This document shows, one piece after another, positions 40,686 through 63,777 of a stretch of DNA of 64,000 nt. Within the stretch, counting starts at the first letter, position 1. Each line of letters begins with the position of its first letter. The stretch spans positions 124,001 to 188,000 of the IMG/VR virus record IMGVR_UViG_3300005289_000016; one strand, given 5' to 3'. A model generated the notes under the pieces. It had not been told where the DNA came from. It worked only from the letters and a program-made list of their open reading frames with translations, and did no database searches. The position numbers and the translations under genes are program-made.

Positions 40686-40820
40686 GTCTTGATACCCGAA
40701 GTGGATTTGAAGAGCGGCTGACACTCGATAAATCGAGATGAGTTAAAGAGAGCAGCTACACATCATTTGACCACTCAAGATCCCGTAGATCTCTATAAAA
40801 GATATAAAGCAAATAAGGAA

Positions 40821-40846
40821 GGGATACAGGCCTTGGCCTGTATCCC
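40821..40846. terminator. strong hairpin in the divergent intergenic region
   Basis: GGGATACAGGCC-TT-GGCCTGTATCCC. Confidence 0.5.
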
Positions 40847-40926
40847 CTGTTTATAGTGGATTTGATTTTACTCAAACCATACATTACTCTCGTAACCAAA
40901 AACCAATAATCGAAATCCTATTGTAT

Positions 40927-41070
40927 GTACAGGCAGTAGATACTGTCAGGTGAGGGGGTGATCCAGCACGAGCGTTTAACCCGAAACGGTTGAGCATCGA
41001 CGGGAGTCCGAAGCATACGTTTCAACGGCGCCTGTACCGGGCAGCATGGGCTCAAACTCATGCTGCCCAT
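40927..41070 (+). ncRNA. candidate small structured RNA of unknown class
   Basis: TATG at 40924-40927; GTACAGGC (40927-34) pairs with GCCTGTAC (41030-37); then 10-bp terminator stem GGGCAGCATG/CATGCTGCCC. Confidence 0.5.
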
Positions 41071-41103
41071 TTATGCCGACACACATTTTGAAGGAGTATC
41101 CAA

Positions 41104-41259
41104 ATGGGCAGTGAAGTAGGTATCACAGGTAATCTGTTCGACACTCAGGAGAAAGAAGCTGAACCGAACACTCCTCAACCGGTCCGCCAACTCAGCGAGG
41201 GTTTTGCCCAACCGGAAGAGAAGGACGATCCGTATGAAGACCTAGGTTATCGGCGTTAA
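41104..41259 (+). CDS. small acidic protein (51 aa, not in ORF track)
   Basis: AAGGAG RBS; MGSEVGITGNLFDTQEKEAEPNTPQPVRQLSEGFAQPEEKDDPYEDLGYRR. Confidence 0.7.
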   Translation: MGSEVGITGNLFDTQEKEAEPNTPQPVRQLSEGFAQPEEKDDPYEDLGYRR

Positions 41260-41262
41260 CAC

Positions 41263-41291
41263 AGGGCGGGGATGTCCCCGCCCTTATGCCG
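41263..41291 (+). terminator. terminator-like hairpin plus TATGCCG
   Basis: AGGGCGGGG-ATGT-CCCCGCCCT then TATGCCG. Confidence 0.7.
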
Positions 41292-41375
41292 CTTCGCCAA
41301 TTGTAATTAAAAATTATAGGGCGATACATTATATCCATGGAATGACAACCATAACTCAAGTAAGGGGTAAGTAAC

Positions 41376-58087: not shown

Positions 58088-59341
58088 ATGGATCGCAAGG
58101 CTTCTATCAGCATCAACAACTTCGACAACCACATGGTCATCCGCATGAACGATGAGTCCAACCTCATCGACCACGTGCCGGCCATGGTGTACAAGGCTTC
58201 CATAGGTCGTCCTGGCATCATCATGGTCAAGGACCGTCCGAACTTCACCTTGCCTCAACTGCGTTTTGGCAAGCACAATGCCCGCGTCAAGCAGATCACC
58301 GCCAGCTACGACCGTTTCGGTAAAAGCAACGGCGTCCTGCTGCACGGTCTGAAGGGGTCGGGCAAGAGCCTGTTGGCAGAAGAACTGGGTAACTGGATGA
58401 TCGCGCAAGATCTGCCGGTCATCATGGTCACTGAACCCATGGGTGCTGAAGAACTGGGTATCATCATCAAGGCCATCGGTCCTTGCATGGTGTACTTCGA
58501 CGAGTTCGGCAAGACCTACAACGAGAAGGTCGAACGTGAGCGTCTGCTGCCGCTGTTCAGCGACACGTCGTTCCTGGGTGTGATGTTCGTCATCACTGGC
58601 AACGAAGCGGAAGAGTTCTCCGACTACCTGGTCAACCGTCCGCAGCGTTTCCGTTACAACATCGGTTTCGGCACGAGCATCGACCTCGAAACCCTCCACG
58701 ACATCATGTCCAAGATGCAGGTCTCCGAGCATCTGCACAAGGCGTTCGAAGCGTACGTGAAGCGCGAAAGCGGCAAGTTGAACTTCGACTCACTGCTCTG
58801 CGTCATCCGTGAATCGGCTGGCTGCAAAGACGCCATCGAAGTCGCCGACATGTGCGAAATCCTCAACGTGCCAGATTTCCCACGGATGCAGTGGTTCATC
58901 TCGCATGTTGAGGTTGTTGACACTCCGGAAGACTACGTGGGCTTCGGCTACATGATGCACGGTATCCGCCACGGCCGCGGCGACATGTCGATCAAGATCC
59001 AGGAATCTCGCCGTAATGCGGACGTCTCGTTCCTGAGCTTCGGCAACGCTAAGTCCGACCCGCTCCTTAAAGACGCGATGCTGCACATCGAGAACCTCGA
59101 AGAGTCGGAAGGCACTCGCGTGGTCGAGTACAAGGGGCTTCGTACGTTCCGCATCACGCTGACCTACGGCTTTGAGTACAACAGCTCTACGCTCAACCTG
59201 TCCGCTGTTGACTCGTTCAACGAGAAGGACGAAAACAAACTTCCTGGCATCGGGCGCATGCACAGCGAGTCGGTTGTCGTTGACAGCGGTGAACAGGCTG
59301 CCATGTCGGGTAAGCACATCCACGGCCAACGCATCAATTAA
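58088..59341 (+). CDS. AAA+ ATPase
   Basis: Walker A GVLLHGLKGSGKS, Walker B MVYFDE, sensor/SRH FVITGN...NRPQRF. Confidence 0.88.
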   Translation: MDRKASISINNFDNHMVIRMNDESNLIDHVPAMVYKASIGRPGIIMVKDRPNFTLPQLRFGKHNARVKQITASYDRFGKSNGVLLHGLKGSGKSLLAEELGNWMIAQDLPVIMVTEPMGAEELGIIIKAIGPCMVYFDEFGKTYNEKVERERLLPLFSDTSFLGVMFVITGNEAEEFSDYLVNRPQRFRYNIGFGTSIDLETLHDIMSKMQVSEHLHKAFEAYVKRESGKLNFDSLLCVIRESAGCKDAIEVADMCEILNVPDFPRMQWFISHVEVVDTPEDYVGFGYMMHGIRHGRGDMSIKIQESRRNADVSFLSFGNAKSDPLLKDAMLHIENLEESEGTRVVEYKGLRTFRITLTYGFEYNSSTLNLSAVDSFNEKDENKLPGIGRMHSESVVVDSGEQAAMSGKHIHGQRIN

Positions 59342-59381
59342 TCCAACCCGCAACACCAACCCAAAGACTGAGGAGTCTTGC

Positions 59382-59705
59382 ATGAAAATCAAAGATATCG
59401 AGAAGCACCAAGCGATCCTGGCTTTCCTGGCCAAGGACAAGAAACCCTTCGAAGCCTTTGTAGCCAAGGCTGACAAGAAAGAGCTGGTGTTCCAAGTCGA
59501 CAAGACCATCCAGATGTCCGTGGAAGTCGAAGACTACGACAAAACCATCAAGGCCGGCTCCACCATCGCCATCGACGTCGAAACCGGCATCGTGACTCTG
59601 GTAGCCGAAACCGGCGTGGCTCCACAAGCCGAACTGCCGAAGTCCAGCCCTCGCAAATCCTGCTCCTCGCATGCCGAGTTGCAAGAATCCCGCGGCGGCT
59701 ACTAA
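59382..59705 (+). CDS. hypothetical protein
   Basis: GAGGAG RBS. Confidence 0.8.
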   Translation: MKIKDIEKHQAILAFLAKDKKPFEAFVAKADKKELVFQVDKTIQMSVEVEDYDKTIKAGSTIAIDVETGIVTLVAETGVAPQAELPKSSPRKSCSSHAELQESRGGY

Positions 59706-59713
59706 GCCTGCAT

Positions 59714-59748
59714 AGAGAGGACCTTCGGGTCCTCTCTTTATTTTTGGA
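59714..59748 (+). terminator. UUCG terminator
   Basis: AGAGAGGACC-TTCG-GGTCCTCTCT-TTATTTTT. Confidence 0.88.
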
Positions 59749-59754
59749 GTTCGT

Positions 59755-60279
59755 ATGACTGCTATTGTGTACCATGATGGGAAGTTGATCGGCGACCGCA
59801 AGCAGGTGGCCTTAACGATACCTACAGCATTCGAAGACGGTCCTAAGGTCTTCATCAGCCGCGATAAGCAATTCGCTTACGGTGCCACTGGCTCCGCCAT
59901 CCATGATTCCATTCGTGACGAATTGGAAGCACAACTCCGTATGGTTCTTGAACGTCTGGTCCTGGACAAACGAGACGTTGTTCCTCTTGCTGACATCATG
60001 GGTGACGACAAGATTGAATGCTTCACCCACGGCACCGTGATGACGCGTGACCATCAATGGGGCATCATGTCCTACGGTTCTCGCTTTCGTCGCTTAGAAG
60101 GCCATACACACGGCGTAGGGACGGGTGGGACACTGCTGGCCTCCATGTTGGTCTGCGGTATGTCGCTCAAAGACGCCATGCCTGTTGTAGAACGTCTGGA
60201 TCACTTGACCGGCACGAAGGTTGATGTGATTTACGCAAGCCGACTCAAGCCATTTGTTATCAAAGGGACGCCACTGTGA
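59755..60279 (+). CDS. HslV/proteasome-beta-like Ntn hydrolase
   Basis: M-T start (Thr1), ..DG..IGD, downstream K (GPKVF), GVGTGG (GSG motif), D..TG. Confidence 0.6.
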   Translation: MTAIVYHDGKLIGDRKQVALTIPTAFEDGPKVFISRDKQFAYGATGSAIHDSIRDELEAQLRMVLERLVLDKRDVVPLADIMGDDKIECFTHGTVMTRDHQWGIMSYGSRFRRLEGHTHGVGTGGTLLASMLVCGMSLKDAMPVVERLDHLTGTKVDVIYASRLKPFVIKGTPL

Positions 60280-60869
60280 ACTTCCTAATCTATCGCCGCG
60301 GCAAGATCGGTTTCCCTGAAACTCACCATGCCAACGAAGGGGTGCATTTCAAAGTGCTCGAGGCCGACCCTGACACCTACTTCAGTGATCAGGGCTTCAT
60401 CTATCCGCTGTCGGGCACCGGACCTAACATTGCGGACGTTGTCAGCGGACGTCTGCGCATGGCCAACCACCCTCGTGTCTCGATGAGCATGATGGCTTTC
60501 ATGATCACCAAGCAAGGGGCGATCACGCAAGTCGACATCTTCAAGAACAACACTCATCCGGATGAGAAACGCTGGACGTTGGACTTCCATGGGTTGCCTA
60601 AGGGCAATTCCACGTACGTCATGTGCTCAGACACCATGACTCGTGACTCGTTGTTGGGTGCACTGGCCGCGTGGAAGGATGAGGAGAAGTTCCAGAAGGA
60701 CACCAACGCCATGTCGGTCGCTTCAAATTATCCGATCGTGTGGTTTACTGTGGAAGAGATCATTGAACGTCTCAATAAACTCTACCCAGAGACCAACACC
60801 AAAGATGACGAAGACAACACTGCCTCCGGTCACCGCCGTCCCCGTAATCGGCCTCTCCCCCGACGGTAA
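60276..60869 (+). CDS. hypothetical protein (possible degenerate Ntn paralogue)
   Basis: GTGA-coupled to the Ntn gene; MNFLIYRRGK start echoes MTAIVYHDGK. Confidence 0.75.
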   Translation: MNFLIYRRGKIGFPETHHANEGVHFKVLEADPDTYFSDQGFIYPLSGTGPNIADVVSGRLRMANHPRVSMSMMAFMITKQGAITQVDIFKNNTHPDEKRWTLDFHGLPKGNSTYVMCSDTMTRDSLLGALAAWKDEEKFQKDTNAMSVASNYPIVWFTVEEIIERLNKLYPETNTKDDEDNTASGHRRPRNRPLPRR

Positions 60870-60934
60870 AATCACCATCACTTACAGGCCCATAAGCACA
60901 CCGGGTAAATAAATACGTTTTGCTCGTGATCTAT

Positions 60935-61810
60935 GTAGTAGCACTGTGACATCATCCAAGGATAGTGCCATTGTTCGGATCGTTCTTAGGTTCCGTGCGC
61001 CGCATCTGGTCGTCACTACAACGTCTTCTAAAGGCCGTGTCACTCGTGACGCCGCCGAATGAGACGGACGACCCGCCGCGCATTACCGGGACCGTTACAT
61101 CCGTTTCAGTGACTTCGGTGCCCTACCTCACGCATAAGGCGCGTGGAACGGTAGGTGCACCGTAGCACTGGAGACCTAAAATTACTGAGCGCCCATACCC
61201 TGCCCTCTAAGGAGCTACACGATCAGATCCCTTCGCGGCGCCGCCGTGTTGGCTTTGCTTACCTTGTCAGTCGCCCTGTCGGTACAGGCGGAACCTCAAA
61301 AGGACCGCTACCAGGACAAGGCCGTTACTGCGACGTCCGATAAGTCATTTCCTCACCACTCGACACTAGGTCTGTTGAGGGCTGTGCCATCCGTGGCGCG
61401 GTTAGAGGGAGTGCTCTTCATGGCACGTGAGTCGCAGCGACGGATAGCGACAGCTACGACCGGGAAGCCCAGCACGGGCACTGATAGGACTATCCAGCGC
61501 GTGCCTAAGGTGCACGTCGGCTGATCAATAGTCTGAGTTCAGTGAACTACATTGATGACTATTGATTCCGATTGAGTTCGGTTAAATTGGATGGCAATGG
61601 CCTCCAGTCTGATACTGACCTACGACTAAGTAACACAAGGCCTCGCACAATGCGAAGACGCGCTTGGTGAAAGGCCTCGGGGGATGAGGACGACAAGCGC
61701 TACACAGGGTTACGGGGCATCGTCGATAGTCGTTCCTATGGTGGGGTTGATCTCCCATTGAGGTGCGTCCGAACGATTGCCCCAAGACTTCTCTTTCTTT
61801 TTTTTGTTTT
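60935..61810 (+). ncRNA. candidate large structured non-coding RNA (about 870 nt)
   Basis: About 980-nt gap without a credible gene; starts at TATG; many nested helices; ends in a stem plus long U-tract. Confidence 0.6.
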
Positions 61811-61850
61811 GCCGGGGTACCAATCCTATAGTTACCATTTGAGGTGTCCC

Positions 61851-62153
61851 ATGTCTCTTGTTCAGATCTCTACCGCTTACGCCAATTCAAGTCCTCCAGG
61901 GCACCGGGATAACCCAGAACGCTGGATGGCTGCCCGTATCACCGCTAGTCACATGAACACCATGTTGCAGCTTATCAAGAAGTCATCCTTCGATAAGCTC
62001 TCTGGTGAAGAGTTCGACTCTGCCAAGCACCTGATGAAAACCATCCAAGGGGCTGCTGGCATCTTCATTGACGCACTGCATACCGCAGATAGCATTGACC
62101 AGCTCATTGACATCAACAATGAGTTCTACAAGATGGCCTGCACCAAATGCTGA
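61851..62153 (+). CDS. hypothetical protein
   Basis: GAGGT RBS before MSLVQ. Confidence 0.75.
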   Translation: MSLVQISTAYANSSPPGHRDNPERWMAARITASHMNTMLQLIKKSSFDKLSGEEFDSAKHLMKTIQGAAGIFIDALHTADSIDQLIDINNEFYKMACTKC

Positions 62154-63405: not shown

Positions 63406-63777
63406 ATGCGTCCTTTGAAACAAGCAATCTACTCCAGCCGTACTGCTGACAAGTTCGTTGTTCGTCTGCCTGATGGCATGCGTGAACGTATCGCAGAGGT
63501 TGCTAGGGATCACCATCGCTCAATGAACAGCGAGATCATTGCTCGCTTAGAGAAGAGCCTGGACCTGCCGGACGCTGAAGTGTTTGAAGTAGAAGCCCCG
63601 GAGGGTTCCATCTGGAATCCTTCCCTTCACAACTTGGTTCGTACCAAGGGTGGACAAATGGGCACTATCACGGAGTTCCGTGAAGTGTACAACAAGACAG
63701 CCGTCATCCAGGCTAAATTGGATCATCTGCATTGGCATGATCTCGGTGACTTGAAGCCGGTGTTTGTCAAAGCGTAA
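63406..63777 (+). CDS. amrZ: AmrZ (AlgZ)-like Arc/ribbon-helix-helix transcription regulator
   Basis: [52 protein letters not shown] is near-identical to the Pseudomonas AmrZ N-terminal domain as I recall it; C-terminal half unrelated. Confidence 0.9.

What the first reader, a model, noticed from the sequence alone, without database searches (positions are those of the whole stretch)
60932..61810. About 870-nt densely base-paired non-coding region: candidate novel large phage RNA
Seen: the only gap of nearly 1 kb in a gene-dense genome. It begins at TATG (60932-35) and ends with GGGGCA(61714)/TGCCCC(61778) plus a roughly 20-nt U-tract. Helices found by eye: nested GGTGC-CCTACC-CACGC (61117-33) with GCGTG-GGTAGG-GCACC (61141-61), inside TCAGTGA/TTACTGA; CCTTGTC(61262)/GACAAGG(61315) enclosing CCTGT/ACAGG; CTGCGAC(61328)/GTCGCAG(61431) enclosing CCTCA/TGAGG and GTGCCAT/ATGGCAC; perfect 10-bp ATCAATAGTC(61524)/GACTATTGAT(61557); GCGCTTG(61660)/CAAGCGC(61694); and an alternative 12-bp GTTCCGTGCGCC(60990)/GGCGCGTGGAAC(61138). 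Established: large ornate ncRNAs (GOLLD, ROOL) occur in phages, and TATG is the phiKZ late start motif. Inference: a late-expressed multi-domain RNA (scaffold, decoy, ribozyme or packaged RNA). I do not recognise it as any known class.
Basis: partly seen in the sequence, partly recalled or inferred. Interest (0 to 1): 0.85.

Follow-up and report, generated by a model that had tools for sequence, protein, structure and literature searches.

The report
Structured phage RNA hiding two small genes
The "empty" 870-base gap in this giant Pseudomonas-type phage is one separate, very tightly folded RNA. It is not purely non-coding: it carries two tiny conserved genes, one starting at the rare codon AUC, followed by a 285-base folded tail whose function is unknown.

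Summary
The dense base-pairing is real. The + strand folds far better than shuffles (z -7.7 and -6.0, against -0.3 to -4.2 for nine control windows). Across 11-15 homologous copies the helices are kept by compensatory changes in every part of the RNA. No Rfam family matches.

The "non-coding" reading is only partly right. All 15 copies keep two small ORFs. ORF-A (window 60971-61165, 64 aa) has an AAGGA Shine-Dalgarno and a TTG or ATG start. ORF-B (61222-61524, 100 aa) has UAAGGAG, 6-8 nt, then an invariant ATC start and a signal-peptide-like N-terminus. Both frames stay open through heavy divergence, and the indels seen in them are multiples of three. The amino-acid sequences are weakly constrained (dN/dS about 0.5-1) and have no homologues outside this element. 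Only the last ~285 nt (61525-61809) is truly untranslated; it is a covarying multi-hairpin domain that ends in a long-stem terminator.

Best reading: a self-contained, phage-RNAP-transcribed, heavily structured bicistronic small-ORF RNA. Structure and the AUC start probably throttle and couple translation. A separate trans-acting RNA function is not excluded.

The family is new and so far confined to pPa_SNUABM_DT01-like jumbo phages.

The parts
60903..60917 (+). AT-rich upstream promoter box GGGTAAATAAATACG, centred about -24 from the start site. It overlaps the stop codon of the upstream gene.
   Evidence: Kept as GGTA(A/T)(A/T)TA(A/T)(A/T)TACG or GGAATTAA(A/T)TACA in all copies. This holds even in L009 and L017, where the upstream gene is different. 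It resembles the phiKZ middle-promoter motif AAanTTACc at -24 (PMC4666361). Function is inferred.
60932..60935 (+). TATG; putative transcription start at G 60935.
   Evidence: Invariant in 14 copies. The phiKZ nvRNAP starts at the G of TATG (PMC4666361). DT01 encodes both vRNAP and nvRNAP (PMC8541153). No transcript data are available.
60935..60957 (+). Invariant 5' leader GUAGUAGCACUGUGACAUC. It is predicted to pair with 61696-61705, closing the RNA 5' to 3'.
   Evidence: Identical in the window, all close copies and DT01; 15 of 19 bases are kept in L017. The pairing is predicted by RNAalifold and is backed only by one-sided G-U-compatible changes. Duplex energies give z -2.7 to +0.4, so support is weak.
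60971..61165 (+). ORF-A, 64 aa. SD AAGGA at 60958-62, then TTG at 60971; an alternative GTG lies at 60965. Stop TAG at 61163-65.
   Evidence: Open in all 13 copies examined, each with AAGGA plus 5-8 nt plus a start codon. The start is ATG in L019, L016, DT01 and L017. The frame stays open across the length differences between copies. dN/dS is 0.2-1.2. It is annotated in DT01 as PA10_00292. AlphaFold2 gives an N-terminal helix followed by disorder, pLDDT 58.
60969..61111 (+). P1, a long irregular hairpin with apex at 61033-61056.
   Evidence: RNAalifold plus pair counts. For the 5' domain as a whole: 93% of cells paired, and 27 pairs changed on both sides against 10 +/- 2 in shuffles and 6-12 in slid controls.
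61122..61155 (+). P2 hairpin, CCUACCUCACGC / GCGUGG..GGUAGG, with the conserved loop AUAAGGC.
   Evidence: Compensatory changes are seen in L010, DT01 and L017; for example CACGC/GCGUG becomes CGACC/GGUCG.
61162..61218 (+). Helix pairing the ORF-A stop codon region (GUAGCACUGGAG) with the ORF-B ribosome-binding site (CUCUAAGGAGCUAC).
   Evidence: RNAalifold gives 11 bp. It is the local MFE structure in the L005, L009, L011 and L019 types, but not in the window, L010, L016, L024, L026, DT01 or L017, so conservation is partial.
61222..61524 (+). ORF-B, 100 aa. SD UAAGGAG at 61207-14, 7 nt, ATC start at 61222, TGA stop at 61522-24. The first ~23 aa look like a Sec signal peptide (IRSLRGAAVLALLTLSVALSVQA|EP).
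   Evidence: All 15 copies have ATC, with no in-frame canonical start upstream. The next canonical start is at codon 6-11 and has no SD. The ORF-B frame has 0 stops in all 12 copies tested; the other five frames have 0-9 (a minus-strand frame reaches 0 in one copy, L011). P(open | shuffle) is 0.01-0.03 per copy. The indels seen in the nucleotide and protein alignments are multiples of three. dN/dS is 0.55-0.9. There are no homologues outside the element among 1.84 billion representatives.
61230..61488 (+). Folded domain inside ORF-B. Nested long-range helices include 61245-54 with 61470-79 and 61322-32 with 61433-43.
   Evidence: 23 of 65 predicted pairs change on both sides, against 2-9 in slid controls. 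Consensus folding energy is -16 kcal per 100 nt, against -0.5 to -7 for flanking genes aligned from the same loci.
61496..61706 (+). Untranslated 3' domain. It comprises hairpin 61496-61522 (overlapping the ORF-B end), the 10-bp hairpin 61524-61566, CCGAUUGAGUUCGG at 61569-82, hairpin 61588-61606, and a branched helix set at 61607-61694.
   Evidence: 94.3% of cells paired, and 20 pairs changed on both sides against 8.5 +/- 1.6 in shuffles and 1-8 in slid controls. No frame is conserved: the longest stop-free run varies from 38 to 69 aa between copies.
61707..61815 (+). Intrinsic terminator: a long bulged stem (61707-23 with 61773-90, with inner helices) followed by a T-rich tract.
   Evidence: The stem covaries; GGGGCAUCG/CGAUUGCCCC becomes GGGACACUG/CAGUGUCCC in L006, L008 and L016. 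The T-tract is conserved in all copies.

Best explanation
The stretch is one self-contained transcription unit of a pPa_SNUABM_DT01-like, phiKZ-related jumbo phage. It consists of:
- a phage-RNA-polymerase-type promoter: an AT-rich ...TAC box near -24, plus TATG with the G at 60935 as +1;
- an RNA of about 875 nt;
- a long-stem intrinsic terminator.

The RNA is a heavily structured bicistronic messenger for two orphan micro-proteins. ORF-A is 64-77 aa. ORF-B is 99-108 aa, looks exported or membrane-anchored, and always starts at AUC. A 285-nt untranslated multi-hairpin tail follows.

Proposed working (inferred):
- Structure and the weak AUC start keep ORF-B output very low.
- That output depends on ribosomes translating ORF-A. 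Those ribosomes melt hairpins P1 and P2 and terminate inside the helix that masks ORF-B's Shine-Dalgarno.
- The 3' domain, the terminator and the 5'-3' pairing stabilise the RNA.

Shown here: the unit's boundaries by conservation, the RNA structure by covariation, and the maintenance of both reading frames and of the AUC start.

Inferred: promoter use, translation itself, export, the coupling, and any phenotype.
For: **Family and boundaries**
- 15 copies of 823-901 nt share the same layout: the window, 3 IMG/VR or metagenome contigs, Logan, ENA and NCBI contigs, DT01, and the distant L017 at 46% identity.
- In L009 and L017 the copy sits in a different gene context but keeps the promoter block and the terminator.

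**Structure**
- Folding z-scores and genome controls.
- Covariation in every region, against shuffled, slid and flanking-gene controls.
- The many G-U pairs and the strand asymmetry in z mark the + strand RNA.

**Coding**
- ORF-B evidence.
- ORF-A evidence.
- Each ORF has a conserved Shine-Dalgarno at correct spacing.
- The signal-peptide features (basic N-end, hydrophobic core with KD about 2.0-2.4, small-x-small site) persist while the sequence diverges.

**Throttling and coupling**
- AUC initiates at about 1-2% of AUG in E. coli (10.1101/063800).
- The ORF-A stop / ORF-B SD helix is predicted in the consensus and in most sequence types.
Against: - There is no expression, ribosome-profiling or proteomic evidence.
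- dN/dS is high: 0.5-0.9 for ORF-B and up to 1.2 for ORF-A.
- AlphaFold2 sees only an N-terminal helix plus disorder in both proteins (pLDDT 56 and 58).
- Neither ORF has relatives elsewhere.
- The SD-masking helix is not the local optimum in the window, L010, L016, L024, L026, DT01 or L017.
- The 5'-3' closure has no compensatory support.
- A cis-only role does not obviously explain a 285-nt conserved, covarying untranslated domain.
- Part of the high nucleotide identity may come from recombination: the 5' domain and ORF-B occur in shuffled combinations between phages.
Confidence: 0.5

Rival explanations
1. Dual-function RNA. The same transcript encodes the two micro-proteins and also acts in trans as an RNA, for example as a base-pairing regulator, a protein sponge or scaffold, or a ribosome or RNase decoy. 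The 3' domain and the SD-like UAAGG motifs shown in hairpin loops (61133, 61505) would be the active surfaces.
For: - Covariation is as strong inside the ORFs as in the untranslated tail, so the fold is selected beyond what a messenger usually needs.
- 285 nt of conserved untranslated hairpins.
- Stretches that are invariant at the nucleotide level even at synonymous sites, for example 61485-61516.
- The amino-acid sequences are weakly constrained.
Against: - No target, partner or processing site can be named.
- There is no resemblance to any curated RNA family.
- The conserved loops are short.
- Recombination may inflate apparent nucleotide conservation.
Confidence: 0.28
2. Pure large non-coding RNA. 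The two ORFs would be untranslated by-products of a GC-rich structured sequence.
For: - High dN/dS, disordered predictions and no protein homologues.
- A non-canonical start on ORF-B.
- Structure throughout the RNA.
Against: - The chance that a 100-codon frame stays open is 0.01-0.03 per independent copy. It stays open in at least five diverged lineages, while the other frames carry stops (3-9 in the other + strand frames, 0-7 in the minus-strand frames).
- The indels seen in both ORFs are multiples of three.
- Both ORFs keep a Shine-Dalgarno at 5-8 nt from the start in every copy.
- The signal-peptide architecture is kept while the sequence changes.
Confidence: 0.08
3. Remnant of something else: a decayed larger gene read through stops or frameshifts, an intron or mobile element, or DNA-level inverted repeats such as an origin or packaging site.
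For: - The region is a gap in the gene calls.
- It has many inverted repeats.
- Its neighbourhood differs in L009 and L017.
Against: - Length and layout are conserved in 15 copies.
- ORF-A and ORF-B stand in different relative frames in different copies, and each has its own SD, so they are not pieces of one gene.
- The pieces hit no Pfam or PHROG family.
- There is no group I or II intron, tmRNA or RNase P signal.
- The G-U pairs and the strand asymmetry argue for RNA, not DNA.
Confidence: 0.04

Closest known systems
Dual-function (coding) regulatory RNAs such as Staphylococcus aureus RNAIII/hld and SgrS/SgrT (own knowledge)
   Same: A discrete, highly structured transcript with its own promoter and terminator, many hairpins and predicted long-range end pairing. 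It carries a small ORF for an exported or membrane-active peptide.
   Different: This one is nearly twice as long as RNAIII and has two ORFs covering 57% of the RNA. No trans target is known. It is phage-encoded. There is no sequence or Rfam relationship.
GOLLD and ROOL large ornate phage-associated ncRNAs (Rfam)
   Same: Large size, phage location, many covarying helices, unknown function.
   Different: The covariance models do not match, even at E<=10. Those RNAs are non-coding, whereas this one keeps two reading frames open.
Structure-controlled and coupled translation in phage messengers (MS2 coat/lysis/replicase coupling; lambda S sdi stem-loop) (own knowledge)
   Same: RNA helices mask ribosome-binding sites. 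Translation or termination of an upstream cistron would open the downstream site. The downstream products are small membrane-directed proteins made at low level.
   Different: The coupling here is only predicted, and the masking helix is not universal among copies. The structure is far more extensive and reaches into a 285-nt 3' tail.
Non-canonical AUU start genes infC and pcnB of E. coli (10.1101/063800)
   Same: A conserved near-cognate AUH start codon behind a good Shine-Dalgarno, which implies deliberately low or regulated initiation.
   Different: The codon here is AUC, not AUU. The gene is a phage orphan with a signal peptide. No IF3-type feedback is known.
sRNAs and 5'UTR-derived RNAs mapped in phiKZ and 201phi2-1 (PMC11512511, PMC10914365)
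   Same: Structured RNAs in Chimalliviridae-type jumbo phages, transcribed from phage promoters.
   Different: Those are under 250 nt and lie at other loci, for example upstream of the gp182-family tail gene. This element is about 875 nt and was found only in DT01-like phages.

Membership tests
GOLLD / ROOL / OLE / HEARO / raiA large ncRNAs (Rfam 15) | Match to the family covariance model at or near the gathering score | tested here: not met
   The whole window gives no hit at gathering thresholds. Positions 60700-62000 at E<=10 give only a 15-nt chance hit, SpR20 at 14.6 bits. Four homologous loci show no hit inside the element.
Group I / group II intron, RNase P, tmRNA, tRNA | Covariance-model or ARAGORN detection of the catalytic core or the tRNA-like domain | tested here: not met
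   for Rfam; for ARAGORN, which finds 0 genes in the window.
Conserved structured RNA (generic) | Helices maintained by compensatory substitutions beyond shuffled, slid and flanking-gene controls | tested here: met
   - 5' domain: 27 pairs changed on both sides against 10 +/- 2 in shuffles.
- 3' domain: 20 against 8.5 +/- 1.6.
- ORF-B region: 23 of 65 pairs, against 2-9 in slid controls.
- Flanking genes: 1-13 such pairs, with 2.5-3 times weaker consensus energy.
Protein-coding small ORF | Reading frame kept open across diverged copies, indels in threes, Shine-Dalgarno plus start codon at correct spacing | tested here: met
   ORF-B. ORF-A.
Protein-coding small ORF | Purifying selection on the amino-acid sequence, a foldable domain, or homologues elsewhere | tested here: inconclusive
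   dN/dS is 0.2-1.2. AlphaFold2 gives pLDDT 56 and 58, with only an N-terminal helix. There is no relative outside the element. The signal-peptide pattern and the C-terminal ERTIQRVPKVH motif are conserved.
Sec-type signal peptide (ORF-B N-terminus) | Basic n-region, hydrophobic h-region of 10-15 residues, small-x-small cleavage site | tested here: met
   Judged by inspection and Kyte-Doolittle windows in all 15 copies. No dedicated predictor was available. Cleavage as opposed to membrane anchoring is untested.
phiKZ-type nvRNAP promoter | TATG with the transcription start at the G; middle class adds AAanTTACc near -24 (PMC4666361) | tested here: inconclusive
   Both motifs are present and conserved. 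However, the combined motif occurs only once in the 64-kb window, and there are no transcript data.
Intrinsic terminator | GC-rich stem-loop followed directly by a U-tract | tested here: met
   Stem 61707-61790 with covariation, followed by a T-rich run. The simple scanner missed it because the loop and stem exceed its limits.
Dual-function RNA | A demonstrated trans-acting RNA activity in addition to coding | not testable with these tools
   Needs genetics or biochemistry.

The most novel reading that the evidence does not exclude
The ~875-nt RNA is a new class of large, ornate, phage-encoded functional RNA whose fold does work in its own right, for example as a scaffold, a decoy, or a signal for mRNA handling in a nucleus-forming phage. 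Translation of its two embedded ORFs, one from an obligatory AUC start, would serve mainly to remodel or license that fold rather than to make useful proteins.
Probability: 0.2. Interest if true: 0.85.

Novelty: new variant of a known kind. Interest (0 to 1): 0.6.

Why it matters
If confirmed, this would be an unusually clear natural case of three things at once:
- pervasive, covariation-supported RNA structure running straight through coding sequence in a DNA phage;
- a conserved AUC initiation codon, when only two non-canonical (AUU) starts are confirmed in E. coli (10.1101/063800);
- a large untranslated 3' domain in a jumbo phage related to phiKZ.

It also shows that gaps in jumbo-phage annotation can hide micro-protein genes that gene callers miss. 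ORF-B is unannotated in DT01.

DT01 is a cultured phage of P. aeruginosa, so every prediction can be tested directly.

Tried and rejected
**Searches and tests that found nothing or did not support the idea**
- Rfam at gathering and at permissive thresholds, on the window and on homologues: nothing.
- ARAGORN: nothing.
- Pfam and PHROGs on both ORFs: nothing.
- tblastn of ORF-B against phage genomes: no hit, not even DT01.
- ESM Atlas: best score 0.61, uninformative.
- Exhaustive HMM search with the ORF-B profile: only fragments of the same element.
- AlphaFold2 on both ORFs: low confidence, so no fold search was run.
- Genome-contig scans with two patterns: no bacterial or prophage copy.
- Looking for the promoter motif elsewhere in the window: TATGTAGTA recurs once, inside a gene, and the box+TATG combination is unique.
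- 5'-3' closing helix tested by duplex energies: not significant.
- Translational-coupling helix: present only in some sequence types.

**Readings rejected**
- One broken gene read through stops. The relative frame of the two ORFs differs between copies, and each has its own SD.

That row was dropped and was not sent to any other remote tool.
- Covariance models were not built, because the domains exceed the practical calibration length.

Full report
**What the window is**

The window is 100% identical to IMG/VR contig UViG_3300005289_000016, which is Ga0065704_10000187, 276 kb. The only related cultured phage in the phage collection is Pseudomonas phage pPa_SNUABM_DT01, 265 kb. DT01 encodes phiKZ-type virion and non-virion RNA polymerases (PMC8541153).

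The stretch lies between a 197-aa gene that ends at 60869 and a 100-aa gene that starts at 61851. All neighbouring genes are on the + strand. Further upstream are an AAA ATPase gene and an HslV-like peptidase gene.

**Checking the observation**

- The + strand of 60915-61810 folds at -355 kcal/mol, against -311 +/- 6 for dinucleotide shuffles (z -7.7). The - strand gives only z -3.2.
- From the putative +1, the element gives z -6.0. Nine other 875-nt windows of the same genome give -0.3 to -4.2. The element is the most structured window tested, but energy alone is not decisive.
- No Rfam family matches at gathering thresholds anywhere in the window. None matches at E<=10 in the region or inside four homologous loci.
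- ARAGORN finds no tRNA or tmRNA.

**Homologues**

I collected 15 copies by four routes:
- DNA patterns;
- the upstream protein;
- the downstream protein;
- ORF-A.

The copies are the window, L005, L006, L008, L009, L010, L011-14, L019, L020, L022, L024, L026, partial L016 and L018, DT01 (L001), and a distant copy in a JGI metagenome, L017, at 46% identity.

All copies are 823-901 nt long and share the same layout. In L009 and L020 the two upstream genes are missing. In L017 the unit sits two genes away from the usual downstream gene. In both cases the promoter block and the terminator travel with the unit. No copy was found in 185,579 bacterial and archaeal genomes.

**Structure**

RNAalifold on 11 full-length copies predicts 219 pairs, 70 of them with compensatory double changes.

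| Region | Pairs changed on both sides | Slid controls | Source |
|---|---|---|---|
| 5' domain | 24 of 65 | 2-9 | |
| ORF-B region | 23 of 65 | 2-9 | |
| 3' domain | 17 of 48 | 0-4 | |
| Terminator | 6 of 26 | 0-3 | |

The pair-counting tool gives:
- 5' domain: 93% of cells paired, and 27 double-changed pairs against 10 +/- 2 in shuffles (0 of 500 shuffles reach the observed value) and 6-12 when slid.
- 3' domain: 94.3% paired, and 20 against 8.5 +/- 1.6 in shuffles and 1-8 when slid.

The structure was derived from the same alignments, which could bias these counts. As a check I ran the same procedure on flanking genes from the same loci. They give 1-13 double-changed pairs and -0.5 to -7 kcal per 100 nt, against 19-23 pairs and -16 to -20 kcal per 100 nt for the three element regions.

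Frequent G-U pairs, together with the strand asymmetry in z, show that the folded molecule is the + strand RNA.

- Supported: the nested P2 hairpin, CTGCGAC/GTCGCAG, the 10-bp helix and the terminator stem.
- Not supported: CCTTGTC/GACAAGG, GCGCTTG/CAAGCGC, TCAGTGA/TTACTGA and the alternative 12-bp pairing.

**The region is not purely non-coding**

The three-way alignment showed a perfect Shine-Dalgarno, CUCUAAGGAG, followed after 6-8 nt by ATC and an open frame.

ORF-B, window 61222-61524:
- All 15 copies have ATC. None has an in-frame canonical start upstream, and the next canonical start (codon 6-11) has no SD.
- The frame has no stop in any of the 12 copies tested, while the other frames have 0-9 (3-9 in the other + strand frames). 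A shuffled sequence stays open with probability 0.01-0.03 per copy.
- The indels seen in the nucleotide and protein alignments are multiples of three.
- The product is 99-108 aa. It begins with a basic residue or two, a 12-15-residue hydrophobic core and a small-x-small site, like a Sec signal peptide. It ends in a conserved ERTIQRVPKVH motif.
- dN/dS is 0.55-0.9.

ORF-A, window 60971-61165, inside the 5' domain:
- It is open in all 13 copies examined.
- AAGGA plus 5-8 nt plus TTG occurs in the window type. AAGGA plus ATG occurs in L019, L016, DT01 and L017.
- dN/dS ranges from 0.2 to 1.2.
- In DT01 this ORF is the annotated hypothetical protein PA10_00292. ORF-B is annotated nowhere except as truncated fragments.

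The two ORFs stand in different relative frames in different copies, and each has its own SD. They are therefore not pieces of one broken gene.

Neither ORF has a Pfam or PHROG match. ORF-B also has no relative among 1.84 billion representatives and no informative Atlas neighbour.

AlphaFold2 models both ORFs as an N-terminal helix followed by disorder, with pLDDT 56 and 58.

The overall pattern is strong selection to keep the frames and start signals, but weak selection on most residues.

**Ends of the unit**

Upstream, an AT-rich box ending in TAC is centred about 24 nt before a TATG whose G is 60935. Both are kept in all copies, including those with a different upstream gene. In phiKZ the non-virion polymerase starts at the G of TATG, and middle promoters carry AAanTTACc near -24 (PMC4666361). 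The match is suggestive only: the combined motif occurs once in this 64-kb window, and no transcript data exist.

The first 19 nt of the putative RNA are invariant, even in DT01.

Downstream, a long bulged stem (61707-61790) with covariation is followed by a conserved T-tract.

**How it most likely works**

Shown:
- a conserved stand-alone unit;
- a conserved fold on the + strand RNA;
- two maintained ORFs with ribosome-binding sites;
- an invariant AUC start;
- a 285-nt untranslated structured tail.

Inferred:
- The RNA is a structured bicistronic messenger.
- AUC initiates at about 1-2% of AUG in E. coli (10.1101/063800). Together with the surrounding helices it would keep ORF-B output low.
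- The consensus fold pairs the ORF-A stop-codon region (61162-73) with ORF-B's ribosome-binding site (61205-18). Ribosomes finishing ORF-A would then unmask it. This helix is the local optimum in only some sequence types, so the coupling is a hypothesis.
- The predicted pairing of the 5' end with 61696-705, and of the ORF-A SD with 61489-95, rests on invariant or one-sided changes and on non-significant duplex energies.

What the two proteins do is unknown. One is small and basic with an amphipathic or hydrophobic N-terminus. The other is exported or anchored, made at low level, and comes from a middle or late type promoter. That would fit lysis timing, envelope modification or superinfection exclusion, but no evidence here supports any of these specifically.

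**Why a trans-acting RNA role stays open**

The fold is as well supported inside the ORFs as outside them. Several stretches are invariant even at synonymous positions. The untranslated tail is long and covaries. A messenger rarely needs all this.

Against over-reading the identity values: the 5' domain and ORF-B occur in shuffled combinations among phages. L010 has a window-like ORF-B with a divergent 5' domain, and L019 has an L016-like 5' domain with an L011-like ORF-B. Recombination therefore contributes to local identity.

**Verdict**

The "non-coding" part does not hold for 57% of the stretch.

This is a new RNA and micro-protein cassette family, confined so far to DT01-like jumbo phages from soil, compost and sewage. 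It is best described as a new variant of structured or dual-function small-ORF RNAs. Interest is moderate to high, and every prediction is testable in the cultured phage DT01.

Noticed in passing
window 40725-41375: A second gene-free gap of 651 nt. The + strand folds with z -5.0 and shows several strong terminator-like hairpins. A 51-aa ORF with a good Shine-Dalgarno lies at 41104-41259. The last ~150 nt are 78% identical to DT01.
   Followed up: partly
window 58088-60279: An AAA+ ATPase gene (417 aa) and, after a small gene, an HslV-family peptidase gene (174 aa). This looks like an HslUV-like protease pair encoded by the phage (DT01 annotation).
   Followed up: partly
L009 1866-2070 and L020, compared with window 59755-60869: These relatives lack the HslV-like and 197-aa genes, so the RNA unit directly follows the ATPase gene. 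It is preceded there by its own terminator-like T-run and the variant promoter box GGTATTTATTTACG.
   Followed up: partly
L011 3263-3973, compared with L012: A GIY-YIG endonuclease gene (236 aa) is inserted right after the downstream 98-aa gene in L011. It is absent from L012, which is otherwise identical across the element and encodes the same 98-aa protein. This looks like a homing endonuclease presence/absence polymorphism.
   Followed up: no
L010, L016, L019 compared with the window (alignments A5, A8): The parts of the unit are mosaic between phages: 5' domain types and ORF-B/3' types occur in different combinations. This points to recombination within the cassette.
   Followed up: partly
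window 61805-61850: The sequence after the terminator, TTTTGCCGGGRTACCAATCCTATAG, is conserved in all copies including DT01, just upstream of the next gene's SD (GAGGTG) and ATG at 61851. It may be that gene's promoter or part of the termination signal. The motif does not recur in the window.
   Followed up: partly
window 63406-63777 and homologous loci: The 123-aa gene three genes downstream of the unit carries an Arc-repressor-like domain (PF03869) in the precomputed annotation of several homologous loci.
   Followed up: no
L019, L020, L022, L024, L025 (RCUO/RCUT/RCUN/RCUU records): At least two relatives (RCUU and RCUN records) carry proteins that NCBI names as 'compost metagenome', and the other RCU* contigs appear to belong to the same series. 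A preprint reports a DT01-like jumbo phage (JPTI55) from compost that transduces genomic islands in P. fluorescens SBW25 (10.1101/2024.08.29.610337). The window's phage may belong to that group.
   Followed up: no
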